Virus record (IMG/VR): IMGVR_UViG_3300003322_000571
Span: 62,001 to 126,000 of that record
DNA: 64,000 nt
Strand: one strand, 5' to 3'
Part shown: positions 1 to 15,956 of the stretch, piece after piece
Layout: each line of letters opens with the position of its first letter
Numbering within the stretch: position 1 is the stretch's first letter
The notes under the pieces: model-generated
Databases searched by the model: none
What the model saw: the letters and a program-made list of their open reading frames with translations, nothing else
Told to the model about the DNA's origin: nothing
Translations under genes and position numbers: made by a program

Positions 1-183
1 TGTAGAGCAGATGCGAAGAACTTCACGCTTGAACAGCGATCGTCCGTATTTCCTGACGCTAGCTCTGATACGATTACCCGAACCTAAATAGTCATCTGTG
101 CTCGCATTCTCCCCTGAATGTACGCCAATGTAAAATTGGTTTGTGTCAATGTTGACGGTCTTGTAAACAATGTGCTCTCTCAT
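1..183 (-). CDS. Seg-like GIY-YIG homing endonuclease, N-terminal part (truncated by window edge; absent from the ORF track)
   Basis: Reverse strand reads GGAGG-N6-ATG then MREHIVYKTVNIDTNQFYIGVHSGENASTDDYLGSGNRIRASVRKYGRSLFKREVL, matching the Seg family pattern (VY..N....YIG.H....D.Y.GSG...KYG...FKRE.L). ATAAATA lies upstream (201-207). Confidence 0.88.
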   Translation of the reverse strand, partial: MREHIVYKTVNIDTNQFYIGVHSGENASTDDYLGSGNRIRASVRKYGRSLFKREVLRICST

Positions 184-292
184 GATACCCCTCCAACGCT
201 TATTTATGGACTTGCATTGCGATTGGTCCAGACTTCCCTGAGAAGATCGATCCGATCACTCGTCAACTCAAGTTGTACAACTAAGTACACCT

Positions 293-390
293 GCCAGCGT
301 TTCTAATATTGGCCTTAGGGGTGCCCTTATAAAGCACTAAGACCCGTCTAGATCAGGCGGTTAATGTGGGTTCGATTCCCATCGCTGGTA
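293..390 (+). tRNA. tRNA with anticodon UAU (Ile/AUA by anticodon) and a long variable arm
   Basis: Acceptor GCCAGCG/CGCTGGT with discriminator A390; D-arm TCTAA/TTAGG; anticodon arm GTGCC-CTTATAA-AGCAC; variable stem CCGTCT/AGGCGG; T-arm GTGGG-TTCGATT-CCCAT. CCA is not encoded. Confidence 0.88.
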
Positions 391-434
391 CACACAACCC
401 TAATATTTCTGTTGGGGTAACGTACTCAACCATA

Positions 435-440
435 TATACT
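435..440 (+). promoter_or_regulatory. sigma70-type -10 element (TATACT) for the small-RNA transcript starting at ~447
   Basis: TATACT ends 6 nt before the first paired base of the Y-like RNA; no clear -35. Confidence 0.5.
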
Positions 441-446
441 TTCTTC

Positions 447-515
447 AGCTGTTGCGTAGTTCAAGGGTTACTTCTTTTGGTGAAACTATCCCCTTGACGT
501 TTTAATCTCAGCTTT
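447..515 (+). ncRNA. candidate minimal Y RNA (Ro60 ligand)
   Basis: Terminal stem AGCTG(447-451)/CAGCT(509-513) with a U tail; helix GT[T]CAAGGG(459-467)/CCCTTGAC(491-498) with a single bulged pyrimidine, as in the GU[C]CGAG/CUUGAC Ro60 site of animal Y RNAs; 1.1 kb upstream of a Ro60 gene. Confidence 0.65.
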
Positions 516-526
516 AACATATGTAC

Positions 527-588
527 GCACGTGGGTGCAAGGTTAACTGTTCCCGTCTCATGACCGGACGTTAGTCTCCACGCTGCCA
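527..588 (+). ncRNA. tRNA-like remnant or mimic with a CAU-type loop, ending in CCA, with no T-arm
   Basis: GCACGTGG/CCACG[C]TGC closing stem, GGTTAA D-loop-like segment, CTCATGA (557-563), CCA at 586-588, followed by a terminator. Confidence 0.4.
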
Positions 589-599
589 ACTTTTGGTTG

Positions 600-640
600 A
601 AGCCCTGGTATGCAACACTGCTACCAGGGCTTTTCCTTTT
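600..640 (+). terminator. intrinsic terminator of the RNA cluster
   Basis: AAGCCCTGGTA...TACCAGGGCTT followed by TTCCTTTT. Confidence 0.8.
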
Positions 641-652
641 TGGAGAAAATAA

Positions 653-1057
653 ATGTCGCTAGGTACAATTAAAGATGTCGTAATTGCTACGGTGGATGTC
701 GCTAATCTCAACAATCGCGTTTACCCAAAGAACGTGATTGAAGAAGCTGTTCGTCAGCGTGTTCATCCGATTTTCGGCCGAGTCGGTATGCCGGAAGCAG
801 GATCGTCTTGTGAGGTCGACCTTCGTGATGTATCACATCAAGTTACCGATCTCCGAATCACCGAAGATGGTAACTTGACTGGCACAGTTGTCGTCCTTGA
901 CACGCCTCCCGGTAGGTTGCTGACATCATTGTTGACAGAGAACCTCGACATCACCTTCCGCATGGCAGGATATGGTGATCTAATTGATAAGGATGGATAC
1001 ACAGAAGTGACCAACTTTCGTCTATCATCGATCAATGCTGTCGCAGACGGTGCTTGA
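653..1057 (+). CDS. T4 gp21-like prohead protease paralog, catalytic residues lost
   Basis: NLNNRVYP, GRVGMP (cf. GELNHP), VSH, LDTPPG, TFRMAGYG (cf. GVSSRGLG), SINAV (cf. GVDAV). Confidence 0.8.
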   Translation: MSLGTIKDVVIATVDVANLNNRVYPKNVIEEAVRQRVHPIFGRVGMPEAGSSCEVDLRDVSHQVTDLRITEDGNLTGTVVVLDTPPGRLLTSLLTENLDITFRMAGYGDLIDKDGYTEVTNFRLSSINAVADGA

Positions 1058-1075
1058 TCTCATTAAGGGTCAACC

Positions 1076-1375
1076 ATGAAACTCCTCGAAGAACTTGAAG
1101 CACAGTTTACTGATGGTCGTCAACTGTCTTCTGAACTGTTTGGTTACATCTTGCGTTGGTATCAAACAGGTGAGATCGACAAAGTTGATGAGCTGCTGAA
1201 GTCGATCGAGTTCAAGCCCACGATGCTGCATGTTGCTGCTGGCGTGATCCGTATCACAGCAGGCTGGCGACACCTTCTTCCGTCTTGGGAAGAAGCAAAG
1301 GATCGGGCGGTGTTGGCGATCACGGAAAGTGGTCATGATCCTCACAAGCTGTTAATGGGAGTTCGTCCGTTATGA
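1076..1375 (+). CDS. hypothetical protein
   Basis: SD present; stop overlaps the next start. Confidence 0.7.
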   Translation: MKLLEELEAQFTDGRQLSSELFGYILRWYQTGEIDKVDELLKSIEFKPTMLHVAAGVIRITAGWRHLLPSWEEAKDRAVLAITESGHDPHKLLMGVRPL

Positions 1376-1560
1376 AACGTGACATCAAAGATCATCCGTT
1401 ATTGAAAACGATGACGGCTGAGCAACTGTTGCAAATGCTCGTTGATGTTCGAGAAGTTGCATGGGTCGAAGGCCAAGATGGACGAACGAAAGAAGATTTT
1501 TACAACGCTTTAACGCAAATTTGTCGCATCACACGTGATGTTGACAACTACCATTTTTAA
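1372..1560 (+). CDS. hypothetical protein
   Basis: ATGA coupling with the previous ORF. Confidence 0.65.
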   Translation: MKRDIKDHPLLKTMTAEQLLQMLVDVREVAWVEGQDGRTKEDFYNALTQICRITRDVDNYHF

Positions 1561-1573
1561 CTGGAGAAACGAT

Positions 1574-3250
1574 ATGTCAAAACTCAATCCAACTGGTCGT
1601 AACGTTACGACAAACATTGTTGCGGTTGCTGCGAACCGTGGTGAACAGCTTGCTGTTTCTGCGAATGGCAACTTGCAATTCAAGAAGGACTCCTACCAGA
1701 CGTTGTACGAAACAACTGTTTCGACGATGCTTGGCAAGGGCAACCAACTGAATTCTGCTGATGCGCTTGTGCAAAAGCTGAAGGCGTCCGTTCGTTCTGT
1801 TGTTGCTGATGGCGCCAGCTCATTCGACTTCATTGCGAACCTCGCAATCCACGCACGTACGGAGATGAACGTCCGTACGATCCCAATCGTTCTTGTGGTT
1901 GAATTTGCGAAGGCGCTCGCCGATCAGCGTCAACCGTTGGTTGCACGTGTTGATGCGATTGAACAAGAACTGACTACAGCTCGTAAGGCTAAGCGTGCGA
2001 CTTCGTCAATCGTTGAGCGCCTGACTGCAGCTCGCGAAGACGCTGAAATCTACACGTATGGCAACATGCGTCAGCTCGTCAATGACGTGATTCAGCGTGC
2101 CGACCAGATCACTGATCTGTACGCATATGCACTGCAAGTGTTCGGTGGCAAGAACAAGATCCCGATGGCGATCAAGCGTGGTGTTGCTGATGCTTTCAAC
2201 AAGTTCAGCGAATACGCGTTCGCGAAGTACAACCGTGACGGTGCTGTCAAGTTCCGTGACGTCCTTCGTATCGTTCACCCAACTGCTTCGACGATCAAGC
2301 AAGGCGAAATCTTTGACAAGATCATGAAGGATACGCTTTCCGTCCCGTACACTTGGGAAACTGAGTTGTCGGCCAACGGTCAGAAGCCAGTTGCAGAACG
2401 TCTGACGCAGAAGCAGCTGTGGACGCAGCTCGTCACGTCTGGTAAGGTCGGTTACATGGCGTTGCTCCGCAACCTGCGTAACATCATCAGTGCTGGTCTT
2501 GATGACGATGTTGTCAAGAAGCATGTTCTCGATGTGATCTCCGATCCTGCACGCGTTGCAAAGAGCAAGCAATTGCCGTATGACTTCATTGAAGCATACA
2601 ACATCGTCAAGCCACTTGACGGTCGTTTCGCAACCGCAGTGTCGAAGGCACTTGATGCTAGTGCTGCGAACTTGCCAGAACTTGGTAAGCGCGTGTGGCT
2701 GATTGTTGACTACTCCGGCTCGATGGGTCATGGTCCGACTTCTGCATTCGGCGGTGGTGTGTTCCTCGCTTCGGCATTGCTGAAGGCTGCAGGTTCGACT
2801 GCTTCTCGTCTTGCTGTGACGTTGTTCGGTTCGACTGCATTGACGTTGAAAGACGTTGATACGAACCATTCGATGCTCGGTCTCCAGCAGATCCTCGAAA
2901 GCTACCGTAAGGATGGCATCAGCGGTTCGACGAATTTCCGTGCAGCTCTTGACCAGAAGTCTCAGCTCGGTTTCGAACCTGACACGATCATTGTGATCAC
3001 TGACGGTGAAGTCAATGGCTTCCCGTACGGCGTGATCAAGAACGTTGCAGGTCGTAGCGTGATGAAGATGGCAGTCAACATGTCTGTTGCAACATCGACT
3101 CCGATGTCGCAGCATGACGGCTGGTATTCAATGGCAGGCTGGTCTCCAGCTATGTTCAAGTGGATCCCGGCAATGCGTGACGCCGGTTCTGTAATCGAAC
3201 AGCTTGCTGTTCCTTACAAGGGTGTCCCTTCAGCTAAGGTTGAAGAATAA
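1574..3250 (+). CDS. rsr: Ro60/Rsr-like TROVE + vWA RNA-binding protein
   Basis: TROVE features (IQRADQIT, KRGVADAFNKFSEYAFAKY, RDVLRIVHP, TWETELS, GYMALLRNLRN, SKQLPY) plus vWA MIDAS (DYSGSM, GSTNF, ITDGE). Start set at the ATG after GGAGA. Confidence 0.93.
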   Translation: MSKLNPTGRNVTTNIVAVAANRGEQLAVSANGNLQFKKDSYQTLYETTVSTMLGKGNQLNSADALVQKLKASVRSVVADGASSFDFIANLAIHARTEMNVRTIPIVLVVEFAKALADQRQPLVARVDAIEQELTTARKAKRATSSIVERLTAAREDAEIYTYGNMRQLVNDVIQRADQITDLYAYALQVFGGKNKIPMAIKRGVADAFNKFSEYAFAKYNRDGAVKFRDVLRIVHPTASTIKQGEIFDKIMKDTLSVPYTWETELSANGQKPVAERLTQKQLWTQLVTSGKVGYMALLRNLRNIISAGLDDDVVKKHVLDVISDPARVAKSKQLPYDFIEAYNIVKPLDGRFATAVSKALDASAANLPELGKRVWLIVDYSGSMGHGPTSAFGGGVFLASALLKAAGSTASRLAVTLFGSTALTLKDVDTNHSMLGLQQILESYRKDGISGSTNFRAALDQKSQLGFEPDTIIVITDGEVNGFPYGVIKNVAGRSVMKMAVNMSVATSTPMSQHDGWYSMAGWSPAMFKWIPAMRDAGSVIEQLAVPYKGVPSAKVEE

Positions 3251-3282
3251 CACTCGTTGAAGGTCAACGACCAACGCAAGAT

Positions 3283-3310
3283 AATAGCCCCGAAAGGGGC
3301 TATTCCTTTT
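3283..3310 (+). terminator. intrinsic terminator after Ro60
   Basis: AATAGCCCC-GAAA-GGGGCTATT-CCTTTT. Confidence 0.8.
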
Positions 3311-3322
3311 GGAGAATACAAA

Positions 3323-3748
3323 ATGGACAACAGAATTTTCAATGTCAACGGACGTGGCCTATCGATGTTGACGTCAACGCTTAAGCTAGCGTTTTGGCAA
3401 AATGCAGGATGCTATGACAAGAGTCAAGACACTGAAACAGTCAAGGGATACACCGTCGAAAAAGACAAAGGCTTGATTTTGCTCTGGGCTGTTGACGAAA
3501 AAGATCCATCACATCAAAAATTCATCGCACCGTTGACAGCTGAAGCCGTCGCACCGCTCGTTGATTTGTGGCTGAAGTCAGACGAAGCGAAACAAATCCC
3601 GTTTGAGCGATGGGAGGATGATTGCGATCATGACGGACACAACACTCTCGGTTGGCGTGTATATTGTGAAGATTGGGGCCATGTAGGAAGGGCAGGATGG
3701 CATGCAACAATTGCAATCAAGCCTGTTTATCTGTGGCACGGCAAATAA
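3323..3748 (+). CDS. hypothetical protein
   Basis: GGAGA SD before ATG 3323; Trp/Gly-rich C-terminus. Confidence 0.75.
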   Translation: MDNRIFNVNGRGLSMLTSTLKLAFWQNAGCYDKSQDTETVKGYTVEKDKGLILLWAVDEKDPSHQKFIAPLTAEAVAPLVDLWLKSDEAKQIPFERWEDDCDHDGHNTLGWRVYCEDWGHVGRAGWHATIAIKPVYLWHGK

Positions 3749-3813
3749 GGGGATAGGTAACTCCTCAACTATTACCTGTAAGTAACGATAACCATAACTA
3801 AAAAGGGTCACTT

Positions 3814-5136
3814 ATGTCAAGTCATGTATTGACGCTCTTCAACCCGATTGTTAGAGCGATTAAAAAGGGATACGTTCAGTATCAGAATCGAAAAGAAGAT
3901 AAAGCGTGGAACACTCTCCGTGCGGAAGAACTTGCAAAACTCGATAGTAAATCTCATAATTGGTACACCGTATTGGTCGATAATCAACTGAAGACAGTTC
4001 GTGGCCAAAAGGAATTGAACGCGAACCGCCAACAAAAGGTTGATGCATCGTACTTCGAATTCTTGTTCAAACTGGGATGCAAGGTTGCACGAGAGTATGC
4101 TGTACTACCAAACATCATCGGCATGCAGCCGTTGCATAGTCCTGTTGGTTTGGTGTATCACATGGAGTACACACAAAAACCAGTCACTTCAGAGCAAAAT
4201 GATGTTGGAAGTGCCGATATCGGTAAGTATCGCCTTGAAGTGATCAGTCATGCTGTCGTTGCATTGACTGAAAGGTTGAGCACCCACGTTGATCCTAACG
4301 TAGCTACTGTCCTGGGACAGAAGGATAAGACACTAGTTGACAAGTTAGTTGACGTTCTCGGGGGAGAAATCGCTCGTGAAATGCTGATTGACATTCTTAA
4401 CGATTTGAGACATCTCGGTCGTCAGAACAGAAATCACTTTGAAGTCATCACCGCATCTGACAGTCATAAAGCAGTATATCTCAACAAAATCTGCAATGAG
4501 ATTGCTGCAGAAACACGACGAGGCCCTGCGAATTGGATTATCGCATCGATTTCAACGGTTTCGAAATTGCAAAGTGCGCCGTTCTCATACTTTAGCTCTG
4601 GTAAGTCCAACCGTGATAGCAGTTTGCTGTTAATGCACGTTGGTCGGCTTAATGGAGTAATTGAAGTTTACGCTTCAACAGAGGTCAAAGACGATGAGAT
4701 TTTGATTGGCTACATGGGCGGTAACGGCGCCACAGATACAGGTTACGTATTTGCTCCATATATTCCTGTTGTTCCAGGTAATGTTGTACTTGATCCTGTA
4801 ACACTTGAGCCGATGGTTGAATTCATGACTCGCTACGGTAAAACCGCATTTAAGAATCTGTCGGACGATTTTGGCAACCTTGTAATCCCACGTCATTCTA
4901 CAGGTGAAAAATACTACCGCATTGTTGAATTCGCAGAACCTAAAGAAGGCGTATACGATCCAACCGCGCTCGTTGAAGATTTTGTGTTCCCTGCGACTAA
5001 AGAACCTCAGTTTCTTGCACCTCTAACAGAGCAATTGCTTGGTAAATCGAACCTTAATATCGAAGAAGACTCGTCTGTTGAGTTGAAAACAAACCTTCCA
5101 GATAGTACTGAGGTGAACGATAAACCGTTCGTATAA
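3814..5136 (+). CDS. divergent T4 gp23/gp24-family capsid protein paralog
   Basis: IIGMQPLHSPVGLVY, TRRGPANWIIAS, GRLNGVIEVY, LIGYMG...DTGYVFAPYIP, DPVTLEP...FMTRYG. Confidence 0.85.
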   Translation: MSSHVLTLFNPIVRAIKKGYVQYQNRKEDKAWNTLRAEELAKLDSKSHNWYTVLVDNQLKTVRGQKELNANRQQKVDASYFEFLFKLGCKVAREYAVLPNIIGMQPLHSPVGLVYHMEYTQKPVTSEQNDVGSADIGKYRLEVISHAVVALTERLSTHVDPNVATVLGQKDKTLVDKLVDVLGGEIAREMLIDILNDLRHLGRQNRNHFEVITASDSHKAVYLNKICNEIAAETRRGPANWIIASISTVSKLQSAPFSYFSSGKSNRDSSLLLMHVGRLNGVIEVYASTEVKDDEILIGYMGGNGATDTGYVFAPYIPVVPGNVVLDPVTLEPMVEFMTRYGKTAFKNLSDDFGNLVIPRHSTGEKYYRIVEFAEPKEGVYDPTALVEDFVFPATKEPQFLAPLTEQLLGKSNLNIEEDSSVELKTNLPDSTEVNDKPFV

Positions 5137-5154
5137 CAATAAGGAATAAAAACC

Positions 5155-5325
5155 ATGTCCAATCAAGTTACTTTCCCAAAGGGCAAGCAAGTCAATCGCA
5201 GTGGTGAACGCACTCGTTTGACGCGTCAAACGACCGTCACTGTTATCCGTAGCGAACCAGCTCGTGACGGCAAGACTCGCGTGTTCTGGAAGTCGCATCG
5301 CGGCGAAGCTAACGCACTCGTCTAA
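5155..5325 (+). CDS. small basic protein, 56 aa (not in track)
   Basis: AAGGA SD, MSNQVTFPKGKQVNRSG...; terminator follows. Confidence 0.7.
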   Translation: MSNQVTFPKGKQVNRSGERTRLTRQTTVTVIRSEPARDGKTRVFWKSHRGEANALV

Positions 5326-5346
5326 TCACAATAGACATTGATCATC

Positions 5347-5372
5347 AACACCGCCCTCGTGGCGGTGTTTTT
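5347..5372 (+). terminator. intrinsic terminator
   Basis: AACACCGCC-CTCGT-GGCGGTGTT-TTT. Confidence 0.8.
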
Positions 5373-5406
5373 GTTCCTGTTTGTTTTCCCCTGCAACTAT
5401 AAGATA

Positions 5407-5681
5407 GTCCGTGAAATACCGGGCGCAATTATGGCTTTGGGAGGTTAGCGTTCGTGCTAATATACCATTCGTTAGGCGGCTTGCAGCGCATAGAACGATA
5501 AACGGCGGAGGGATCCAGGCGTCAATGCCTCCCTTGACTGAAGCAAAACTGATTGACTAACCTTTGATAAAGGCGGCGGGGTACGGCTCTGCTAGTGACC
5601 GGCTGGCCTAACTTCGTGTTGCATAACTACGCTGGGAATCCCGGCTATACCTCCATCGTTTGCATGAGATAACCGGTGGAC
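5407..5681 (+). ncRNA. candidate ~275-nt structured RNA of unknown family
   Basis: No credible ORF in the gap; nested helices 5407-5422/5673-5681, 5423-5433/5622-5632, 5471-5477/5606-5612; possible pseudoknots 5521-5526/5552-5557 and 5440-5449/5644-5654; -10-like TATAAGAT at 5398-5405. Confidence 0.5.
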
Positions 5682-5696
5682 ATTTAAGGAGAGATT

Positions 5697-6257
5697 ATGA
5701 AAGAGATTGAGCGAAAATTCTTGGTTAACTCTGCTCAGTTCAACAGAGACATCAGTGTGCTCGAGAACTACGGAGTGGACATTGTCAAGTATTCGATCAT
5801 GCAAGGTTACTTGTCGACGGGTATTGATATGCCGATTCGCATCCGGCATCGATCGCATTTTGATCCAGTTGCCGTTGCAACGGTCGATGCTTACACGATG
5901 ACTGTTAAGGCTAATCGTACTGGTATCACGTGCGATGAGATCGAGTTCGATATCCCTGGTGATAAGTTTAATCAGCTGTTTAGGCTTTGTGGTGATAACG
6001 TTCTGGTAAAGTCGCGTTATGTCGTACCTTATCGAGGCAGTATTTGGGAAGTTGACATGTTTCATGGGGACTTACAAGGCCTTGTTGTTGCGGAGATTGA
6101 ATTGCAACATGAGGATGATCTTTTCGTACATCCTGTGTGGGTTGATACTCAAGTAACTGCCGACTCGCGGTATGCTAATGCGAACCTCGTGAAGCAGACG
6201 TTTGACATCCTAAGTAACGAATTGGTATGGAAGAATGTTGAACGATTTAGGGTTTAA
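5697..6257 (+). CDS. CYTH-domain (triphosphate tunnel) protein
   Basis: EIERKFLV, IMQGYL, RIR, KSRY, WEVDMFHG..GLVVAEIEL. Confidence 0.9.
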   Translation: MKEIERKFLVNSAQFNRDISVLENYGVDIVKYSIMQGYLSTGIDMPIRIRHRSHFDPVAVATVDAYTMTVKANRTGITCDEIEFDIPGDKFNQLFRLCGDNVLVKSRYVVPYRGSIWEVDMFHGDLQGLVVAEIELQHEDDLFVHPVWVDTQVTADSRYANANLVKQTFDILSNELVWKNVERFRV

Positions 6258-6274
6258 AGGTTAAAGTCACCAAC

Positions 6275-6472
6275 ATGAGCAAACCACACTATCACAAAGA
6301 CGAACGCGGCATTCTGCAAAAGTGCTATCACGGTGCACAGAATTTGCTGACCGATTACAAGTTTTGGATCGGCGTCACATTGAGTTTCCCTCTCGAACAT
6401 TTCATCTGGGAGAAGCTGTGGCCTTTCTATCTGATCTCCGAATGGCTCGGTCTAATTGACCATCTCCACTGA
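6275..6472 (+). CDS. small membrane protein
   Basis: Hydrophobic FWIGVTLSFPLEHFIWEKLWPF segment. Confidence 0.65.
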   Translation: MSKPHYHKDERGILQKCYHGAQNLLTDYKFWIGVTLSFPLEHFIWEKLWPFYLISEWLGLIDHLH

Positions 6473-6645
6473 TGGACGAGTTTAATCCGTACGATCCTGA
6501 GCTTGCGCAACAGATCACAGAACATGCACAGAGATTACTAGATGGTCTTTTGAAGAGTTCCCATCTGCAAAGTAACTCTCCTGTCCAACAGTGGTTCGAA
6601 GCCAATCCACAACTACCTTTCAATGATTTCTGGAATCCAAAATGA
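6472..6645 (+). CDS. hypothetical 57-aa protein (not in track)
   Basis: MDEFNPYDPELAQQI...; translationally coupled at both ends. Confidence 0.55.
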   Translation: MDEFNPYDPELAQQITEHAQRLLDGLLKSSHLQSNSPVQQWFEANPQLPFNDFWNPK

Positions 6646-7790
6646 GCAAATTTGCTGTTGAAGTCGTCCGTATCCGCGCAATCGAACCGATCACCGGAGC
6701 TGACGCAATTGAACTCGCTGTTGTTGGTGGCTACCGTTCTGTCGTTAAGAAGGGTGACTACAAAGTCGGCGATCTCGCCGTGTACATTCCTGAACAAGCA
6801 ATCGTCCCTGATTGGTTGCTCGAAAGGATGAATCTCACTGGTCGTCTTGCTGGGACGAATAAGAACCGCGTAAAAGCAATCAAGCTTCGCGGTTGTCTGT
6901 CACAAGGTTTGCTGATTCCCGTCAAGCATGTTGCAGCTTCCGGTGCGAACTACATTCAGAATGATGTAAGTCTGATTCCTGTTAAGGAAGGCGATGACGT
7001 TGCTGATTTCCTTGGTATCGTTAAGCATGAAGTGCCGATCCCCGCACACCTTGCTGGTGAAGTGTACAACGCAGGTAGCCACTTGACTGTTCCGTACGAT
7101 ATCGAGAACTACAAGAAGTTCGTCGATGTGTTTGAAGATGGTGAAGAAGTCGTGTTCACCGAAAAACTGCATGGCACATTCACCGGTATCGGTATTCTGC
7201 CGCGTGGTGATTGGGAGGAAAAGCACTTCCTCAGCCGTTTCGTTATCTTCAGCAAGGGACTTGGTGCACGAGGTCTGTGCTTCAAGGATTGCGATAACAA
7301 CGCAGACAATCTGTACGTTCGCACGCTGATGGAGTCCGACATCTTCTCTCGTCTGTCTGACCTGATGGAGGAGATGGAAGAAGAGCACGGCTTTGATCGT
7401 CCTTTGTTCCTGCTCGGAGAAACGTTCGGTGCAGGTGTACAAGACTTGCAGTACGGTAACCTGCCGGCTTCGTTCCGCCTGTTTGACGTATGCGTTGGCT
7501 ACCGCGGTGATCAGTTCTTCTTCGACTACGAAGGTCGTGTCCGCCTCGCGAACCATCTTGAAATTCCGATGGTTCCGATTCTGTACAAGGGTCCGTTCAG
7601 CCAAGCGGTGCTCGATCAGTACACGAATGGCAAGGAAACGGTTTCTGGTAAGGAATCACACATCCGCGAAGGTGTTGTGATCACTCCTGTCGTTGAACGT
7701 GAACATCCTGAACTCGGCCGTGTGATCTTGAAGTCTGTCTCTGCAGACTACCTGCTTCGCAAGAATGAAAACGCAACGGAGTACAACTGA
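6642..7790 (+). CDS. RNA ligase, DRB0094/Rnl5 family
   Basis: N-terminal IEPITGADAIE module; motif I TEKLHGT, GETFG, FDV, EGVV, LKSVSADYL. Confidence 0.92.
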   Translation: MSKFAVEVVRIRAIEPITGADAIELAVVGGYRSVVKKGDYKVGDLAVYIPEQAIVPDWLLERMNLTGRLAGTNKNRVKAIKLRGCLSQGLLIPVKHVAASGANYIQNDVSLIPVKEGDDVADFLGIVKHEVPIPAHLAGEVYNAGSHLTVPYDIENYKKFVDVFEDGEEVVFTEKLHGTFTGIGILPRGDWEEKHFLSRFVIFSKGLGARGLCFKDCDNNADNLYVRTLMESDIFSRLSDLMEEMEEEHGFDRPLFLLGETFGAGVQDLQYGNLPASFRLFDVCVGYRGDQFFFDYEGRVRLANHLEIPMVPILYKGPFSQAVLDQYTNGKETVSGKESHIREGVVITPVVEREHPELGRVILKSVSADYLLRKNENATEYN

Positions 7791-7969
7791 TGAATAACGT
7801 CTTAGTAGGGTACGAGGGAAGTGCTGAAGTTGACATCAGCTACTTCTATTGCCCGTACATCCCAGGACAACCTATTCCTGTTGATGTGTGGGATCACCGT
7901 GCTGTTAAGAGGCCAACTGATATCCAGCGCCGGATCATGGAAGCGGTTCAACGTCCTCAACTGTATTGA
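7790..7969 (+). CDS. 59-aa protein carrying a gp23 major-capsid motif (not in track)
   Basis: MNNVLVGYEGSAEVDISYFYCPYIP...; start overlaps the ligase stop (TGATG). Confidence 0.7.
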   Translation: MNNVLVGYEGSAEVDISYFYCPYIPGQPIPVDVWDHRAVKRPTDIQRRIMEAVQRPQLY

Positions 7970-8035: not shown

Positions 8036-9133
8036 ATGAACCGTCTTCCTTTTGGTCAGCAACAGACCACAACGGCACAACCAGTTGACATGAGTGCGTT
8101 CATTCAAGTGAACCCGACTCCTGCTCAGCCGGTCGTCGTTCATCAACCGCAGACGCGTGCACTGACTGTGATCAGTGATAAAGACATCCAGAACTTCGGG
8201 ACGGCGTCGACGAATCGGATCTCTGCAACGTCGCAGAAGATTCTCGCTGGTACGAAGGCCTCTGCAGTCGATGACTTTGGCGACAAGCTGAATGAGCTCG
8301 TTGCTACGACAAAGAAGCTCGATCCTGCGGATATCGGCAAGCCTAGTCTGATCAAGAAGCTGTTCGGGATCGGCTCCAGCGTCAAGGATCAATTCCAAGC
8401 GCAGTATCAAACCGTTGAACAGCGGATGAATACGCTGATCGCGGAGATTGATTCGATGGCGAAGCTGATGGAGCAACGAATCGATGATCTCGAGACGATG
8501 TACAAGGAAAATGAGGATGCGTACAAGCAACTCAGCCAAGACATCGCTCAGATCAACAGTATCGTCGCGACGATGAAGGCTGATCTTGCAGCACAACCAA
8601 CGCCGACTGATCCGATCGAAGCGCAGCGTCTCAATGACTATCAGGAACTGATCGACCGGCTCGAAAAGCGTGCTGATGATCTCGAACGTGGAAAGCAGCT
8701 CGTCATCCTGTCGCTGCCGGAAATTCGGATTGAGCAGACGAACAAGCGCAATCTCGTTGCAAGTATCGCAACGCTGAAGAGCACGACGATTCCGGCTTAC
8801 CAAGGTCTGTTCTCGCGTTACATCCTGGCGATGGAAACGAAGAAGGGCAACCAGGTCGTCGCTGCTTTGCAGGATGCAACTGATGAAGCGTTCCGCAAGC
8901 AAGCTGACCTCGTTCGTCAGAATGCGGTTGACTCTGCGAAGGCTCAACAACGGTCTGTCGTGACGACGGAGACGCTGATTCACTGCCGTGATCAGATGCT
9001 TGCAACTCTCGACGACGTCAAGAAGATCAATGACGCTGGCCGTAAGGCACGTCAAGACGCTCGTCCGCAACTCGAACAACTGGAACAGTCGCTGATCGCA
9101 CGCGCTGCTCCGCAACAACTTTCTCACAACTGA
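8036..9133 (+). CDS. telA: toxic anion resistance protein (TelA/KlaB family)
   Basis: Coiled-coil protein with IQNFG, LIKKLFG, QYQTV, RLEKRADDL, LPEIRIEQ..N..L...I, TIP. Confidence 0.85.
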   Translation: MNRLPFGQQQTTTAQPVDMSAFIQVNPTPAQPVVVHQPQTRALTVISDKDIQNFGTASTNRISATSQKILAGTKASAVDDFGDKLNELVATTKKLDPADIGKPSLIKKLFGIGSSVKDQFQAQYQTVEQRMNTLIAEIDSMAKLMEQRIDDLETMYKENEDAYKQLSQDIAQINSIVATMKADLAAQPTPTDPIEAQRLNDYQELIDRLEKRADDLERGKQLVILSLPEIRIEQTNKRNLVASIATLKSTTIPAYQGLFSRYILAMETKKGNQVVAALQDATDEAFRKQADLVRQNAVDSAKAQQRSVVTTETLIHCRDQMLATLDDVKKINDAGRKARQDARPQLEQLEQSLIARAAPQQLSHN

Positions 9134-9149
9134 ACGTAGGAGTTCAAAA

Positions 9150-9887
9150 ATGGCTGGTATCAATCTGCAAAAACGCGCCGAAGCTGTCGGCATCGTCCTG
9201 GCAAAGCGTGGCATCACGAAGGTGCCCCCGGTTCGTGTCGGCATGGCACTGGACGTTTCTGGCTCTGCACAAACGTTCTATACGAGCGGCGTGATGCAAG
9301 AAACGATCGACCGTCTGCTCGGCGTTGCGCTGAAGTTCGACGACAACGGTGAACTCGACTCGTGGCTGTTCCACAACGACGTTCTCCCTCAACTGCCGAC
9401 GCTGACGGAAAGCGATGAAGGTACGTACGTCAAGAACGTCGTCCTCAAGCAACGCGGTCTGTGGGGTGGTACGTCGTACGCTCCTCCGCTGAAGGCTGCG
9501 ATGAGCTACTACTTCCAAGGTCCTGCTCCCGCCCCTGCTGCGAAGTCGGGTGGTCTGTTCGGCCTGTTCAAGAAGGAAGCTGCGCCCGCACCGGCTCCCG
9601 CTACCAAGCAAGACCCGGCAATGCTGCTGTTCGTCACCGACGGTGCGAACGGTGACCGCGCTGAAGCTGCTCAAGTGCTCCGCGAAGCTGCGAAGAGCTC
9701 GCCGGTGTACTTCCAAATGGTCGGTATCGGCCGTGCATCCGAGTTCGACTTCATCCGTCAAATGGCTGACGAGCTGCCGAACGTCGGGTTCGTCAACCTC
9801 AGCACGCTCAGCATGACCGATGAACAGCTGTACGAACAGCTGATCAATCCGGAATTCTGTGAGTGGATCAAGACGCTCAAGGCGTAA
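9150..9887 (+). CDS. vWA domain protein, TerF-C-terminus type
   Basis: ALDVSGS, FDDNGELDSWLF, GGTSYAP, FVTDG, YFQMVGIG. Confidence 0.88.
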   Translation: MAGINLQKRAEAVGIVLAKRGITKVPPVRVGMALDVSGSAQTFYTSGVMQETIDRLLGVALKFDDNGELDSWLFHNDVLPQLPTLTESDEGTYVKNVVLKQRGLWGGTSYAPPLKAAMSYYFQGPAPAPAAKSGGLFGLFKKEAAPAPAPATKQDPAMLLFVTDGANGDRAEAAQVLREAAKSSPVYFQMVGIGRASEFDFIRQMADELPNVGFVNLSTLSMTDEQLYEQLINPEFCEWIKTLKA

Positions 9888-9901
9888 TTCAACGACCGAC
9901 A

Positions 9902-9931
9902 AAAAGGGAGGCTCGACCTCCCTTTTCTTTT
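9902..9931 (+). terminator. intrinsic terminator
   Basis: AAAAGGGAGG-CTCGA-CCTCCCTTTT-CTTTT. Confidence 0.8.
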
Positions 9932-9944
9932 CTTAAGGACACAG

Positions 9945-11222
9945 ATGGACACTCAACTATTCATTCCAGAAAAGCTGAAAGTTGGCTACCAAAAGCGTGA
10001 AGGTACGTATACGAGTAAACTAGCGTACGTGATCTACTACGACGCTAAGGGAAAGCTACGTAAGGAAACGTCGTGGCAGGGTTGGAGAAGCAAGGACATC
10101 GAACCTGATGACTTCGAAAACATCCCAACGACAGGGTTCATGATCAACAAGGGAATCACTCGCGGTGGTTATGATTGGTACTCTGATACCGTGACGAAAG
10201 TCCGTATCTGGGATCCGCGCGACTTTGAGATTGAGATCACGCTCGCCAACCTGATCGCGATCCTGATGCATAGTGATGTCTCTAAGCGAGATATCAACGT
10301 TCCTTGTGTGTATGCGTGGCACGGTTCTGACCTCGTTCTTCTTCCGACGAATACAGAAGAATACGAACTGTCGGCGAAGCATACTGCAAAGCAATCGCTC
10401 AAGTTTAGTTCGAAGGAACTAAAGATTGGCGCTACGTACAACATCAAGAAGGACAGCTCACAAGTTGTTTACCTCGGCTACTACGACCATTATGTTCCCG
10501 TTGATAAGTCAGGGGTTAAGGTCAAGCGCTGGTACAGCGTAGATGGATTGATCAAGCAAGGGATCAGCGGCAAGAAGCATGTATTCTACAATCTCACTGA
10601 CGATACGTTCAATTATTCAGCGCCATCTGCATTGATTGCAACGGTTGCGGATCTTGAGATTCATCCTCAGTATGCTGAACTACTAGACAAGTACTATGCA
10701 CAGTTTGAATCGCAGTTGATTGGCGGCTTGTATCTAAAGCCAAAGAATCCTCCTCCTTCTAGTCTACCGAATTACTATTACTACAGGTTCCCCACTTGGG
10801 TAAAGGTGTCTGATACGGTGTATGTCGACATTCAACTGAATGTTAACGTCGAACGTCCATATCATTATCACTGGAATGATCCAGTCAAACGGAACAAGGA
10901 TATGAGGATCGTCATTGATACAAAAATCAAGAACATTTGTGTCTATGACGAGGATACCAACTCTGTTAAGCTCAAGCCGGAATACTGGTCAGCATTCCCA
11001 ATCAGTTTCAACGATCCACAAATCACCGCTGTTGTGCAGCCGATCTTTGACATGTGGAGGCAGTTAGTCCAAGCGGAGTTCGAACAAACCCACGACATCT
11101 CTTATAACCACGAGGAACATTACAAGAAGATTGAGGCACAATTCCAACACGTGTTGGGGGAACGTCCCGCTTTTGTGATGATCGACGGTAAGAAATGTGC
11201 TAATGGTCCCACCATCTACTAA
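9945..11222 (+). CDS. hypothetical protein, paralog 1
   Basis: N-terminal ~200 aa similar to the next gene (IPE..VG.Q.R.GTYT.KLAYVIY.D..GK.RKETSWQ.WR; RIWDPRDFE.EIT). Confidence 0.85.
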   Translation: MDTQLFIPEKLKVGYQKREGTYTSKLAYVIYYDAKGKLRKETSWQGWRSKDIEPDDFENIPTTGFMINKGITRGGYDWYSDTVTKVRIWDPRDFEIEITLANLIAILMHSDVSKRDINVPCVYAWHGSDLVLLPTNTEEYELSAKHTAKQSLKFSSKELKIGATYNIKKDSSQVVYLGYYDHYVPVDKSGVKVKRWYSVDGLIKQGISGKKHVFYNLTDDTFNYSAPSALIATVADLEIHPQYAELLDKYYAQFESQLIGGLYLKPKNPPPSSLPNYYYYRFPTWVKVSDTVYVDIQLNVNVERPYHYHWNDPVKRNKDMRIVIDTKIKNICVYDEDTNSVKLKPEYWSAFPISFNDPQITAVVQPIFDMWRQLVQAEFEQTHDISYNHEEHYKKIEAQFQHVLGERPAFVMIDGKKCANGPTIY

Positions 11223-11224
11223 TC

Positions 11225-12517: not shown

Positions 12518-12547
12518 CATTTCTTAGACTTACACAAGGACTTTATT

Positions 12548-12979
12548 ATGACAACTCTAGACGAACAAATCCGCGGCATGTTTGCCAAGCTGAATGACCG
12601 CAAGGCAAAGCTCGAAACACTGAAGCAGCAGTCTGCTCCGAAATGGAAGACGACTGGTACGTTCCGCCAGATTGGTGCAACGTCGGTGACGAGCATGCAG
12701 ACTGCATCGAAGGAAACGATCATCGAGATCGCTACTCAGGTCGAACTGCTCGCAGGAGCACAAGAATCGGTTGCAAAGAAGCTCGGTACAGATGCTACCG
12801 CACTGATCCAAGGCTACAAGCTGGAAGATTGGTATCATGACTTCCAGAAGCGCCTGGCGACAATCAATCAACGCGATGAAGAGGCAGCGATTGCTGATCT
12901 CGAAAAGCGTCTGAACAGCGTTCTCTCGCCTGAAGAACGTCGCCGTATCGAAGTTGAACTCCTGCTCAAGGAAGTTTGA
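12548..12979 (+). CDS. coiled-coil hypothetical protein
   Basis: AAGGA SD; terminator follows at 13002-13030. Confidence 0.8.
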   Translation: MTTLDEQIRGMFAKLNDRKAKLETLKQQSAPKWKTTGTFRQIGATSVTSMQTASKETIIEIATQVELLAGAQESVAKKLGTDATALIQGYKLEDWYHDFQKRLATINQRDEEAAIADLEKRLNSVLSPEERRRIEVELLLKEV

Positions 12980-13041
12980 TAGACAATTAGTAGTACAAAC
13001 CAAAACGACCTTCGGGTCGTTTTCCTTTTTGGAGATTTGTT

Positions 13042-13374
13042 ATGGGGTATACGTTATATCTGTTCTTGCAAGACTTGTTCCTGCACTTGTTCGCAATTGC
13101 CGTGGTTGTCGTCGGCACTGCATTTATGAGTTTACTCACCGGAGGGATCGCAGTGTGTTCCCTAGTTGTTGTTAAATTGCTTATCAACGGCTTTTGTGTG
13201 TTTATTCATCATCCATTTCGTTTCCCTCTAACGGATAATTGGACGGTCGGCGAGAAACGCGTGGCTACGATTGTTGGTGCTGTCTGCTTTGTGTATAGCT
13301 GCTTGTTTGTCGTTTACTCACCTGGGATGGAGCGGACTCGCTATATTTTGACAGGTCAACACTACCATGGATGA
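13042..13374 (+). CDS. membrane protein (~3 TM)
   Basis: GGAGA SD; hydrophobic segments. Confidence 0.65.
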   Translation: MGYTLYLFLQDLFLHLFAIAVVVVGTAFMSLLTGGIAVCSLVVVKLLINGFCVFIHHPFRFPLTDNWTVGEKRVATIVGAVCFVYSCLFVVYSPGMERTRYILTGQHYHG

Positions 13375-13597: not shown

Positions 13598-13637
13598 ACC
13601 ACCTGTTTTTTGAGATGAAGATTTCATGAAGAACCTG

Positions 13638-15950: not shown

Positions 15951-15956
15951 ACAATC

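What the first reader, a model, noticed from the sequence alone, without database searches (positions are those of the whole stretch)
293..7969. Candidate phage RNA-protection/anti-defence locus: Ro60, Y-like RNA, tRNA and mimic, large ncRNA, CYTH and RNA ligase, interleaved with head-protein derivatives
Seen: within 7.7 kb lie a Ro60 gene, a DRB0094 RNA ligase, a CYTH protein, an atypical tRNA and three non-coding RNA candidates. Two of these carry the identical octamer CCCTTGAC (491-498, 5531-5538), which contains the CUUGAC strand of the Ro60-binding helix. Three derivatives of gp21/gp23 are interspersed. Established: bacterial Ro60 works with Y RNAs and co-occurs with RNA-repair ligases (usually RtcB), and hosts use tRNA nucleases against phages. 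Inference: this is a coordinated counter-defence island in which Ro60 RNPs protect or repair RNA while head-protein derivatives blunt sensing. I do not know a description of this combination.
Basis: partly seen in the sequence, partly recalled or inferred. Interest (0 to 1): 0.85.

Follow-up and report, generated by a model that had tools for sequence, protein, structure and literature searches.

The report
Jumbo-phage Ro60, Y RNA repair cluster
A giant uncultured phage carries a conserved gene cluster for looking after RNA (a Ro60 protein with its small Y RNA partner, an odd-shaped tRNA, an RNA-joining enzyme and an undescribed ~260-base folded RNA), but the shared 8-letter 'signature' that drew attention is a coincidence, and a role against bacterial defences is still a guess.

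Summary
The genes and most of the RNAs are real. The window comes from a 350-kb IMG/VR phage contig. It encodes Ro60 (TROVE+vWA), a DRB0094/Rnl5 RNA ligase, a CYTH/TTM protein, one gp21-like and two gp23-like derivatives, a class-II-shaped tRNA(UAU), a Y RNA and a ~260-nt structured RNA.

The Y RNA (445-515) belongs to the YrlA-type family. A covariance model built from it hits about 160 sites in ~135 Ro60 loci, every one on the Ro60 strand. These include the cultured phages CcrColossus and Tenjo. The window copy is a short form without the tRNA-like module.

The octamer CCCTTGAC is chance. Shuffled sequences share 1.3 such 8-mers on average, and in both RNAs the octamer sits in a covarying stem whose sequence differs in relatives.

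The large RNA (5407-5665) is 79-82% identical in relatives whose neighbouring proteins are only 41-65% identical. It shows compensatory changes and tetraloop swaps and matches no Rfam family. It occurs in only part of the lineage.

The gene order PTH2 - tRNA - Y RNA - (gp21-like) - Ro60 - 141-aa protein - gp23-like - 56-aa protein - CYTH - ligase is conserved in more than ten distinct relatives.

The RNA quality-control and repair reading is supported. The counter-defence and capsid-decoy reading is untested.

The parts
195..281 (+). Remnant copy of the 3' end of the PTH2 (peptidyl-tRNA hydrolase) gene. It was left when a GIY-YIG/NUMOD3 homing-endonuclease gene (minus strand, running off the window start) was inserted between PTH2 and the tRNA.
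   Evidence: tblastn gives 72% identity to PTH2 residues 110-138. Pfam assignments for PTH2 and the endonuclease in L001.
293..390 (+). tRNA(UAU) with a class-II-like long variable arm (5-bp stem, 7-nt loop YAGAUNA). It has G1.U72, A73, a conserved C31.A39 mismatch and no encoded CCA.
   Evidence: Rfam tRNA 32.4 bits against a gathering score of 29. Nine orthologs: 93.5% of cells paired, and 17 of 25 pairs show compensatory changes against 5-9 in the slid controls. ARAGORN calls the orthologs in L134 and L317 tRNA-Ile(tat).
431..438 (+). Conserved CATATATA box upstream of the Y RNA, possibly the -10 element of its promoter.
   Evidence: Conserved in six of seven close relatives at the same distance from the RNA (alignment A2). 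That it is a promoter is inference.
445..515 (+). Y RNA, YrlA-type Ro60-binding module, short form. Features: outer stem 448-451/508-511, UUGCGUAG motif 452-459, inner stem 461-467/491-497, UUAC kink motif 468-471.
   Evidence: Model R1 scores it 74.5 bits, the only hit in the 64-kb window. Ten of 11 pairs have compensatory changes. About 160 hits in Ro60 loci are all on the Ro60 strand.
516..600 (+). Variable 3' stem-loop domain of the Y RNA transcript. Its sequence is not conserved, but a closing stem is kept (CGUGG/CCACG here, CGUAG/CUACG in L134).
   Evidence: Alignment A2 and fold. There is no tRNA-like match.
601..640 (+). Rho-independent terminator that ends the Y RNA transcript.
   Evidence: A 10-bp GC-rich hairpin followed by a T-run, read directly. 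It sits at the same place in all close relatives.
653..1057 (+). gp21 (prohead protease)-like 134-aa protein, probably not catalytic.
   Evidence: phrog_207 E 4e-17; PF03420 26.3 bits against a cutoff of 27. Orthologs lie between the Y RNA and Ro60 in L002, L132 and L319, and upstream of Ro60 in L003 and L056. There is no conserved His at the GELxHP-equivalent position. The window has Ala where most orthologs have Ser (weak alignment).
1076..1560 (+). Two small ORFs (1076-1375 and 1372-1560) of unknown function. The first is in the same frame as 653-1057 after a TGA stop, but it has its own ATG and no gp21 similarity.
   Evidence: ORF list and sequence. No family match. An ortholog of 1076-1375 occurs without the gp21-like gene in L133.
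1574..3250 (+). Ro60 (TROVE ring plus vWA domain), 558 aa.
   Evidence: Pfam, phrog_850, phiLo Ro60 9KOP/9L5Y E 3.7e-14. 2242 homologs at E<=1e-10 among the 8000 candidates scored.
3284..3310 (+). Terminator-like hairpin followed by a T-run after Ro60.
   Evidence: Read directly from the sequence.
3323..3748 (+). Conserved 141-aa protein that follows Ro60 in most relatives. It has a new alpha/beta fold and an invariant His/Asp/Trp-rich C-terminal motif.
   Evidence: Orthologs are 49-62% identical. AF2 pLDDT 85. No PDB fold match. Two unnamed viral matches.
3814..5136 (+). Fast-evolving gp23-like paralog with a complete HK97 fold, a ~100-aa N-terminal helical region and a disordered C-terminus.
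   Evidence: PF07068 E 9e-36. Foldseek matches T4 gp23/gp24 at E 6e-13. Terminal branches are 3-10 substitutions per site, against 0.07-0.7 for bona fide MCPs.
5155..5325 (+). Conserved 56-aa protein of unknown function.
   Evidence: Orthologs are 41-65% identical at the same position. No family match.
5347..5374 (+). Rho-independent terminator upstream of the large RNA.
   Evidence: Found by the terminator scan and visible in the sequence.
5407..5665 (+). Large structured RNA ('C'), about 260 nt, with a multi-helix junction. No terminator separates it from the CYTH start codon at 5697.
   Evidence: 79-82% nucleotide identity in L002/L132 and L005, with a partial copy in L319. 73 consensus pairs, 96% paired, 8 compensatory against 0-1 in slid controls. 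UUCG/GUAA/GAAA tetraloop swaps. No Rfam or BLAST match.
5697..6257 (+). CYTH/TTM-family phosphohydrolase with the N-terminal ExExK motif (EIERK).
   Evidence: PF01928, NeuTTM 2FBL/3TYP, motif read from the sequence.
6275..6645 (+). Two small ORFs (6275-6472 and 6472-6645) translationally coupled between CYTH and the ligase.
   Evidence: Overlapping stop and start codons. The first is 57-64% identical in relatives.
6642..7790 (+). ATP-dependent RNA ligase of the Rnl5 (DRB0094/NgrRnl) type: N-terminal OB domain plus nucleotidyltransferase domain, with the motif I lysine (KLHG).
   Evidence: TIGR02306 239 bits, PF09414 plus PF21189, alignment to 5COT.
7790..7969 (+). 59-aa fragment of gp23 (the conserved 'YFYCPYIP' region), coupled to the ligase stop codon.
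   Evidence: PF07068 E 6e-7, 29.6 bits against a cutoff of 24.4. 57% identical to the 111-aa ortholog in L132.

Best explanation
This is a conserved RNA quality-control, RNA-repair and translation-maintenance cassette of a lineage of uncultured jumbo phages of about 340-350 kb with T4-type capsid genes.

Shown:
1. The phage encodes Ro60 together with a bona fide YrlA-family Y RNA. The Y RNA is transcribed from its own unit just upstream. In this lineage it has lost the internal tRNA-like module.
2. A class-II-shaped tRNA(UAU) lies between PTH2 and the Y RNA. The AUA codon it would read still behaves as isoleucine.
3. A TTM/CYTH phosphohydrolase, two small proteins, an Rnl5 nick-sealing RNA ligase and a gp23 fragment form one operon. 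In part of the lineage this operon is preceded by a new, highly constrained ~260-nt structured RNA.
4. Capsid-gene derivatives are interleaved and conserved in position: a probably inactive gp21-like fragment, a complete but very fast-evolving HK97-fold gp23 paralog, and a gp23 fragment.

Inferred mechanism:
- The Y RNA docks on the Ro60 ring through its UUGCGUAG/stem module and gates or tethers it, as in Deinococcus, Salmonella and Thermus phage phiLo, so that Ro60 captures damaged or misfolded RNA ends.
- Rnl5 reseals 3'-OH/5'-phosphate nicks in structured RNA such as tRNA or rRNA.
- PTH2, the tRNA and the upstream exoribonuclease keep translation running during infection.
- The large RNA is most likely either a cis-acting leader that controls the CYTH-ligase operon or a stable RNA processed from that transcript.
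- Whether the damage being repaired is inflicted by host defence nucleases is plausible but not shown.
For: Protein identities.

Y RNA:
- RNAalifold on 29 copies gives 11 pairs, 10 of them with compensatory changes.
- Model R1 finds 117 + 46 + 6 hits, all on the Ro60 strand and mostly within 1-2 kb of Ro60, often in tandem.
- Long-form members carry a T arm, an acceptor-like hairpin and a D arm in the YrlA order. This matches the description in PMC4201824 and the conserved UA kink.
- A phage Ro60 was shown to bind two upstream Yrl RNAs in PMC12135203.

tRNA. AUA-codon columns read I > V > L, like ATT and ATC.

Large RNA.

Operon packing.

Synteny in more than ten distinct relatives.

Upstream RNA and translation genes.

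Jumbo-phage precedent for TROVE alongside RNA ligases: PMC7824862.
Against: - Conserved order among related phages is expected from common descent and does not prove joint function.
- Several parts come and go independently. The large RNA is absent from L134, L318, L320, L321, L052, L135 and L003. The gp23-like gene is absent from L318 and L052. The tRNA lies 5-10 kb from Ro60 in L135, L052 and L005.
- No end-healing kinase/phosphatase or RtcB was found in the cluster, so breaks of the anticodon-nuclease type (2',3'-cyclic phosphate / 5'-OH) could not be sealed by Rnl5 alone.
- AUA is the phage's rarest Ile codon (25 of 741), so the need for the tRNA is unclear.
- There are no expression or binding data: the phage is uncultured.
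Confidence: 0.6

Rival explanations
1. One reading: a counter-defence island. The Ro60 RNPs and the ligase repair RNA cut by host tRNases. The gp21/gp23 derivatives act as decoys that soak up or blunt capsid-sensing defences such as Lit or CapRel.
For: - The Ro60-linked gp23-like proteins keep a complete HK97 fold. They evolve far faster than the true capsid proteins of related genomes: terminal branches of 3-10 against 0.07-0.7. The adjacent Ro60 stays 60-73% identical. This is an arms-race-like pattern.
- A Gad2 anti-Gabija gene sits next to Ro60 in L003.
- An ADP-ribosylglycohydrolase and an exoribonuclease lie upstream.
- The authors of PMC12135203 suggest that a phage Ro60 could help escape host defences.
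Against: - There is no direct evidence.
- Fast evolution fits relaxed constraint equally well.
- No decoy capsid protein is known to me (own knowledge).
- The cluster lacks the end-healing enzymes needed after anticodon-nuclease cuts.
- The gp23-like gene is dispensable in L318 and L052.
Confidence: 0.25
2. Host take-over rather than repair. The Ro60-Y RNA complex recruits and redirects or inhibits host PNPase or other exonucleases to reshape RNA decay, as proposed for Thermus phage phiLo. The neighbouring ligase and CYTH genes are functionally separate.
For: - phiLo Ro60 with its Yrl RNAs forms RYPER-like complexes with host PNPase and attenuates it (PMC12135203).
- Y RNA tethering to PNPase is the best-established bacterial role (PMC4201824).
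- Ro60 and the ligase operon are separate transcription units, with terminators at 3284-3310 and 5347-5374.
Against: - The window Y RNA lacks the tRNA-like 'effector' module thought to contact partners.
- Linkage of Ro60 with Rnl5 persists down to about 45-53% Ro60 identity (L055, L008, L016, L017).
Confidence: 0.3
3. The cluster is a collinear stretch of unrelated accessory genes and decaying duplicates of the head module (21 ... 23 ... 23-fragment), into which RNA genes and homing endonucleases have been inserted. Only the Ro60/Y RNA pair is a functional unit.
For: - Parts are gained and lost independently.
- There are homing-endonuclease insertions and a duplicated PTH2 remnant.
- The gp21-like protein seems to have lost its catalytic residues, and there is a 59-aa gp23 fragment.
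- The flanking Ter cluster shows the whole region is accessory.
Against: - The gp23-like ORF stays intact (364-542 aa) in ten relatives despite extreme divergence.
- The gp21-like gene keeps its place upstream of Ro60 even in L056, where Ro60 is only 47% identical.
- CYTH through the gp23 fragment are translationally coupled.
Confidence: 0.3
4. The large RNA is a reduced RNase P RNA or another known RNA class, not a new one.
For: The segment around 5636-5650 recalls the RNase P CR-V/P4 3' strand, and the 5' GUCCG recalls CR-I with its bulged U (my reading, from memory of the E. coli M1 RNA).
Against: - No Rfam hit at E<=10, even when the 316 nt were searched alone.
- There is no sequence for P1-P3 upstream of the supposed P4 strand.
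- GUCCG pairs locally with CGGGC, and the pair covaries to GUCUG/CAGGC in L005 and L319.
- No blastn similarity to any E. coli RNA gene.
Confidence: 0.03

Closest known systems
YrlA/YrlB Y RNAs with Rsr (Ro60) of Salmonella, Mycobacterium and mycobacteriophages (Chen et al. 2014, PMC4201824)
   Same: - Encoded next to Ro60 on the same strand.
- A 5' motif related to GNCGAAN0-1G, followed by a stem and a conserved YUAY (UUAC) motif.
- Family members in other loci carry T arm, acceptor-like hairpin and D arm in the same permuted order.
- Often two or more copies per locus.
   Different: - The window copy has no tRNA-like module (a short form, more like YrlB).
- The motif is UUGCGUAG (CGUA instead of CGAA).
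- A variable 3' stem-loop and a terminator are appended.
- A second, T-arm-bearing copy lies elsewhere in the genome, at the end of the tRNA array.
Thermus phage phiLo Ro60 with Yrl1/Yrl2 (PMC12135203; PDB 9KOP, 9L5Y)
   Same: A phage-encoded Ro60 with Y-like RNAs encoded directly upstream. It is the closest solved structure to the window protein (E 3.7e-14).
   Different: phiLo is not a jumbo phage. No linkage to an RNA ligase, CYTH, a tRNA or capsid paralogs is reported for it. The window Ro60 has not been tested biochemically.
Bacterial rsr-yrlBA-rtcBA RNA repair operon (PMC7790460; discussed in bioRxiv 10.1101/312249)
   Same: Ro60 and Y RNAs are genetically linked to an RNA ligase, suggesting repair of broken structured RNAs.
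   Different: Here the ligase is an ATP-dependent Rnl5 (3'-OH/5'-phosphate nick sealing), not the GTP-dependent RtcB (3'-phosphate/5'-OH). There is no RtcA cyclase and no RtcR regulator. The partner is a CYTH protein instead.
Jumbo-phage RNA repair systems surveyed by Iyer et al. 2021 (PMC7824862)
   Same: That survey notes that a small subset of jumbo phages encode a ROT/TROVE protein alongside RNA ligases and many tRNAs, read as an RNA-repair platform with a tRNA-like partner.
   Different: The passages I searched in that paper, by keyword only, do not describe this arrangement: Rnl5 with CYTH, the large RNA, the class-II-like tRNA(UAU), or the interleaved capsid paralogs.
Rnl5 ligases DraRnl (DR_B0094) and NgrRnl (PDB 5COT)
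   Same: N-terminal OB domain plus nucleotidyltransferase domain. The equivalog model TIGR02306 is passed well above its cutoff. The motif I lysine is present.
   Different: 42 residues longer than NgrRnl (382 against 340 aa). The phmmer alignment to NgrRnl covers only residues 13-179. Activity and substrate are unknown.

Membership tests
YrlA-type bacterial/phage Y RNA | Encoded within a few kb of Ro60 on the same strand | tested here: met
   Window copy 445-515 lies 1.06 kb upstream of Ro60 on the + strand. All of the roughly 160 R1 hits in Ro60-oriented loci are on the Ro60 strand.
YrlA-type bacterial/phage Y RNA | 5' motif GNCGAAN0-1G (proposed Ro60 contact) | tested here: inconclusive
   The window has UUGCGUAG at 452-459: one A-to-U change and no N. 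Relatives show GCGAAG (L013) and GUCGUAG (L128, L081), so it looks like a variant of the same motif.
YrlA-type bacterial/phage Y RNA | Conserved YUAY (UA kink) after the first stem | tested here: met
   UUAC at 468-471. The block (U/A)UACUU that contains it is invariant in 29 aligned copies. The kink is described in bioRxiv 10.1101/312249.
YrlA-type bacterial/phage Y RNA | Internal tRNA-like module (T arm, acceptor-like hairpin, D arm) | tested here: not met
   The window copy has only a 23-nt apical segment. Long forms of the same model family do have the module (L059, L060, L013, L046). The second copy in this genome has a T arm.
YrlA-type bacterial/phage Y RNA | Bound by Ro60 | not testable with these tools
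   Needs EMSA or RIP.
Ro60 / TROVE | TROVE HEAT-repeat ring followed by a vWA domain | tested here: met
   PF05731 and PF13519. Aligns to phiLo Ro60 over residues 172-534.
Rnl5 RNA ligase (DRB0094/NgrRnl) | N-terminal OB domain plus nucleotidyltransferase domain with the motif I lysine; equivalog model passed | tested here: met
   TIGR02306 239.4 bits against 151.15. PF21189 plus PF09414. KLHG aligns with KLDG of NgrRnl.
CYTH / triphosphate tunnel metalloenzyme | CYTH domain with the N-terminal ExExK motif | tested here: met
   PF01928 24.5 bits against 23.2, a marginal pass. NeuTTM 2FBL/3TYP E 3e-10. EIERK at residues 3-7.
tRNA | Cloverleaf with conserved T loop, supported by covariation; 7/5 acceptor/T stems | tested here: met
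   Rfam score above gathering. 17 of 25 pairs are compensatory.
tRNA-Ile (class I shape) | Short (4-5 nt) variable region | tested here: not met
   The variable region is about 27 nt, with a 5-bp stem and a 7-nt loop, and is conserved in orthologs. Decoding of AUA as Ile is supported only indirectly.
T4 gp23-type major capsid protein | Gp23 domain and HK97 fold | tested here: met
   PF07068 E 9e-36. Foldseek to T4 gp23/gp24 E 6e-13.
T4 gp23-type major capsid protein | Is the genome's capsid-forming protein (slow-evolving, in the head module) | tested here: not met
   It falls outside the tight MCP clade and has a 6.3 substitutions/site terminal branch. A canonical MCP (P0160) is recorded on a contig of the same length (450,775 nt) as the one that carries a Ro60-linked copy (L055). 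The window genome's own MCP was not located.
Peptidase S77 (T4 gp21 prohead protease) | Full protease domain with catalytic His and Ser | tested here: not met
   Only profile positions 50-172 of 198 are matched, at 26.3 bits, below the cutoff of 27. No His at the aligned site. The window and L319 have Ala where the other orthologs have Ser. The alignment is weak, so this is tentative.
RNase P RNA or any Rfam family (for the large RNA) | Match to a curated covariance model | tested here: not met
   No hit at E<=10 on 316 nt searched alone, nor on 8.2 kb.

The most novel reading that the evidence does not exclude
The ~260-nt RNA at 5407-5665 is a new class of large structured RNA that works with the CYTH-Rnl5 operon. 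It could be a damage- or tRNA-sensing leader, or a scaffold, guide or ribozyme partner for RNA repair. The Ro60-linked HK97-fold paralog and the inactive gp21-like protein would be dedicated protein components of this phage RNA-maintenance system, rather than debris from the capsid genes.
Probability: 0.25. Interest if true: 0.8.

Novelty: new variant of a known kind. Interest (0 to 1): 0.6.

Why it matters
Ro60/Y RNA systems are well known from autoimmunity research, but their function in bacteria and phages is poorly understood. This locus contributes four things:

1. A covariance model of the Ro60-binding module. It finds unannotated Y RNAs in about 135 loci, including cultured phages (Caulobacter phage CcrColossus, Xanthomonas phage Tenjo), which makes experiments possible.
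2. A natural case in which the Y RNA has lost its tRNA-like module while a free-standing, oddly shaped tRNA sits beside it.
3. A conserved pairing of Ro60 with an Rnl5 ligase and a CYTH enzyme instead of RtcB/RtcA. This points to a different repair chemistry.
4. A highly constrained large RNA with no known relatives. Large structured RNAs without a family are rare and have often turned out to be ribozymes or RNP scaffolds.

The fast-evolving capsid-fold paralog next to Ro60 is a concrete candidate for testing the idea of decoys against capsid-sensing defences.

Tried and rejected
- Octamer as a Ro60 signature: rejected.
- Rfam identity for the Y RNA and the large RNA: none, even on short stretches.
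- Large RNA as RNase P RNA: rejected.
- Large RNA as coding sequence: rejected, because of indels of 1 and 4 nt plus compensatory changes.
- Homologs of the large RNA elsewhere: the IMG/VR pattern scan found only the window's own contig. The GTDB genome scan found nothing. E. coli genomes and GenBank phages gave nothing meaningful.
- AUA reassigned to Leu by a Leu-like tRNA body: rejected. AUA columns behave like Ile.
- 653-1057 plus 1076-1375 as one gp21 gene read through TGA: not supported. The second ORF has its own ATG and no gp21 similarity, and it occurs alone in L133.
- A separate 'tRNA mimic' next to the Y RNA: not found.
- Function of the 141-aa protein from its fold: no PDB match.
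- Megablast of the locus against GenBank phages: no match.
- Burroughs & Aravind 2016 and two Wolin reviews could not be read, as they are not held in the library.
- I did not build a covariance model of the large RNA, because about 290 positions would exceed the calibration limit.

Full report
**Source and gene content.** The window is part of IMGVR_UViG_3300003322_000571, a 350,089-nt viral contig. It has no close relative among GenBank phages.

On the + strand the finding region encodes:
- a gp21-like 134-aa protein (653-1057);
- two small ORFs;
- Ro60 (1574-3250; TROVE + vWA);
- a 141-aa protein (3323-3748);
- a gp23-like 440-aa protein (3814-5136);
- a 56-aa protein;
- CYTH (5697-6257);
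- two small coupled ORFs;
- an RNA ligase (6642-7790);
- a 59-aa gp23 fragment (7790-7969).

The ligase passes the DRB0094 equivalog model at 239 bits against a cutoff of 151. It aligns to Naegleria Rnl5 with the motif I lysine in place. The CYTH protein has the ExExK motif and resembles the Nitrosomonas triphosphatase NeuTTM. The closest solved Ro60 is that of Thermus phage phiLo.

**The tRNA.** Rfam a tRNA just above threshold, with a 25-nt insertion in the variable region. ARAGORN finds no tRNA in the window. Orthologs exist in eight relatives, and ARAGORN calls two of them tRNA-Ile(tat).

On nine sequences the cloverleaf plus a 5-bp variable-arm stem is 93.5% paired. Seventeen of 25 pairs show compensatory changes, against 5-9 in the slid controls. 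The anticodon loop CUUAUAA is invariant. G1.U72, A73 and a C31.A39 mismatch are conserved.

AUA is the rarest Ile codon in the window: 25 of 741, or 1.8 per thousand codons. In ortholog alignments, AUA columns hold I > V > L, like ATT and ATC and unlike Leu codons. AUA has therefore not been reassigned.

In relatives the tRNA follows PTH2 rather than Ro60. In the window a homing-endonuclease gene has been inserted between them, leaving a duplicated PTH2 3' remnant at 195-281.

**The Y RNA.** A ~70-nt core at 445-515 is conserved directly upstream of Ro60 in all close relatives. It has four features:
- an outer stem;
- the motif UUGCGUAG;
- an inner stem;
- the motif UUACUUC.

RNAalifold on 29 copies predicts 11 pairs, 10 of them with compensatory changes. 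A covariance model (R1) finds 117 hits in 96 sources and 46 more in 43 sources. All are on the strand of Ro60, usually within 1-2 kb and often as 2-5 tandem copies. The 64-kb window has exactly one hit, at 74.5 bits.

Longer members of the same family carry a T arm, an acceptor-like hairpin and a D arm between UUACUUC and the return strand. This is the circularly permuted tRNA-like module that defines YrlA (PMC4201824). The UA of UUAC corresponds to the conserved kink in the YrlA crystal structure. The window copy is a short form without that module.

A second copy, with a T arm, lies at the end of a 22-tRNA array elsewhere in the same genome. The model also finds unannotated copies upstream of the TROVE genes of the cultured phages CcrColossus and Tenjo. 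In the window, the core is followed by a variable stem-loop and a terminator (601-640), and is preceded by a conserved CATATATA box.

**The octamer.** CCCTTGAC at 491-498 is the 3' strand of the Y RNA inner stem. In relatives that strand reads CTCACACA, CACACTTT, CCCTAGCC and so on, always complementary to its partner. The copy at 5531-5538 is likewise in a covarying stem of the large RNA (CAATCGAC and CCACTGGC in relatives). Shuffled versions of the two regions share 1.3 8-mers on average. The octamer is a coincidence, and so is its resemblance to the vertebrate CUUGAC strand.

**The large RNA.** Between a terminator (5347-5374) and the CYTH start lies a segment that is 82% identical over 287 nt in L005 and 79% over 294 nt in L002. 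In the same relatives, the flanking CYTH and 56-aa proteins are only 41-45% and 54-65% identical. Indels of 1 and 4 nt rule out coding sequence.

The consensus fold has 73 pairs in 13 helices and is 96% paired. Eight pairs have compensatory changes, against 0-1 in slid controls. One hairpin swaps UUCG, GUAA and GAAA tetraloops between relatives.

There is no Rfam match, even at E<=10 on the isolated 316 nt. There is no similarity in E. coli genomes or GenBank phages. Pattern scans found nothing in IMG/VR beyond the window's own contig, and nothing in GTDB genomes.

The RNA is present in the window, L002/L132, L005/L006 and L319 (a partial copy). It is absent from L134, L318, L320, L321, L052, L135 and L003, where the same intergenic gap is short or holds non-homologous sequence. 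No terminator separates it from CYTH. It may therefore be a leader of the CYTH-ligase operon or a stable RNA cut from that transcript. A resemblance to RNase P conserved regions was considered and rejected (see the rival explanations).

**Synteny.** The order PTH2 - tRNA - Y RNA - (gp21-like) - Ro60 - 141-aa - (gp23-like) - 56-aa - CYTH - small ORFs - Rnl5 - (gp23 fragment) - TelA/vWA-TerF recurs in contigs with Ro60 at 61-73% identity. PTH2, the gp23-like gene and Rnl5 stay near Ro60 down to about 52% identity. An Rv2179c-like exoribonuclease and an ADP-ribosylglycohydrolase lie upstream. Below about 45% Ro60 identity, only the Y RNA remains linked. Collinearity among relatives is weak evidence of joint function, though, and several parts are optional.

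**Head-protein derivatives.**
- The gp23-like protein is predicted to have a complete HK97 fold with a long N-terminal helical region. It matches T4 gp23/gp24.
- In a tree with 14 bona fide capsid proteins of related jumbo contigs, the capsid proteins form a tight clade with terminal branches of 0.07-0.7. The ten Ro60-linked proteins have terminal branches of 3-10.
- At least one related genome appears to carry both kinds of protein.
- The gp21-like protein covers only part of the protease domain and seems to lack the catalytic residues.
- It nevertheless keeps its place upstream of Ro60, even in a distant relative (L056).

These are real, maintained paralogs of unknown function. Fast evolution is compatible with an arms race or with relaxed constraint.

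**The 141-aa protein.** The protein that follows Ro60 in most relatives gives a confident model (pLDDT 85). It has no PDB match and only two unnamed viral matches.

**Comparison with what is known.** The following are already described:
- phage Ro60 genes with adjacent Y RNAs (PMC4201824; PMC12135203);
- Ro60 linked to an RNA ligase (RtcB) in bacteria (PMC7790460);
- TROVE proteins as part of jumbo-phage RNA repair (PMC7824862).

New here are:
- the short Y RNA form beside a class-II-shaped tRNA(UAU);
- the Rnl5-CYTH partnership;
- the large RNA;
- the conserved capsid paralogs.

I file the locus as a new variant of a known kind. The large RNA is the most novel element. A counter-defence role is plausible but not shown.

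Noticed in passing
L005 3879-4559 (also L132, L133, L134, L135, L318, L319, L320): Relatives encode a short release-factor-like protein (PCRF + RF-1 domains). Gene callers split it into 35 aa plus 175-186 aa. In L005 the two pieces are in one frame, separated by a single in-frame TGA. This suggests programmed readthrough or recoding, or autoregulation of an RF-like gene. No homolog was found in the window or in the 8.4 kb upstream of it.
   Followed up: partly
L270 4686-12655 (same 350-kb contig, outside the window); window-wide stop codons: The genome has an array of at least 22 tRNAs. It includes one with anticodon CUA (amber-suppressor-like, called 'Pyl' by ARAGORN) and one called with a 4-base anticodon. 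TAG ends only 1 of 69 long ORFs in the window (TAA 38, TGA 30).
   Followed up: partly
L270 12657-12776: A second Y-RNA-like gene in the same genome (R1 48 bits) lies directly after the tRNA array, far from the Ro60 region covered by the window. It has a T arm but no clear D arm.
   Followed up: partly
window 1-281 and L001 6877-8610: Two GIY-YIG homing-endonuclease genes flank PTH2. One of them is a minus-strand seg-like gene with NUMOD3. A 29-codon duplicate of the PTH2 3' end sits at window 195-281, which looks like a footprint of endonuclease-gene insertion.
   Followed up: partly
L003 8958-9920: A Gad2 (anti-Gabija, PF26128) gene lies immediately upstream of Ro60 in one relative, so a known anti-defence gene has landed in this neighbourhood.
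   Followed up: no
window 8036-17470: A Ter-type stress cluster follows the finding directly: TelA, vWA-TerF, TerC/DUF475, HAD hydrolase, ComF-like PRTase and TerD. It is conserved in relatives.
   Followed up: partly
window 9945-11222 and 11225-12517: A tandem pair of paralogs (39% identical, phrog_2475, unknown function) lies inside the Ter cluster. Relatives have a single matching gene there.
   Followed up: no
L001 6381-6809 (upstream of the window): A fourth head-protein derivative: a second gp21-like fragment (PF03420 E 1.4e-3, 27% identical to the 653-1057 protein), between the ADP-ribosylglycohydrolase and PTH2.
   Followed up: partly
L135 13197-13665 and 9364-9435: Where the window has the large RNA, L135 has an unrelated 466-nt insert. 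ARAGORN also calls an odd tRNA with a 2-base anticodon just upstream of the L135 Y RNA.
   Followed up: no
L322 (CcrColossus) 1566-2761; L324 (Tenjo) 2482-2924: Cultured phages have two or three unannotated Y-RNA-family hits upstream of their TROVE genes. In CcrColossus they sit beside an annotated tRNA-Gln.
   Followed up: partly
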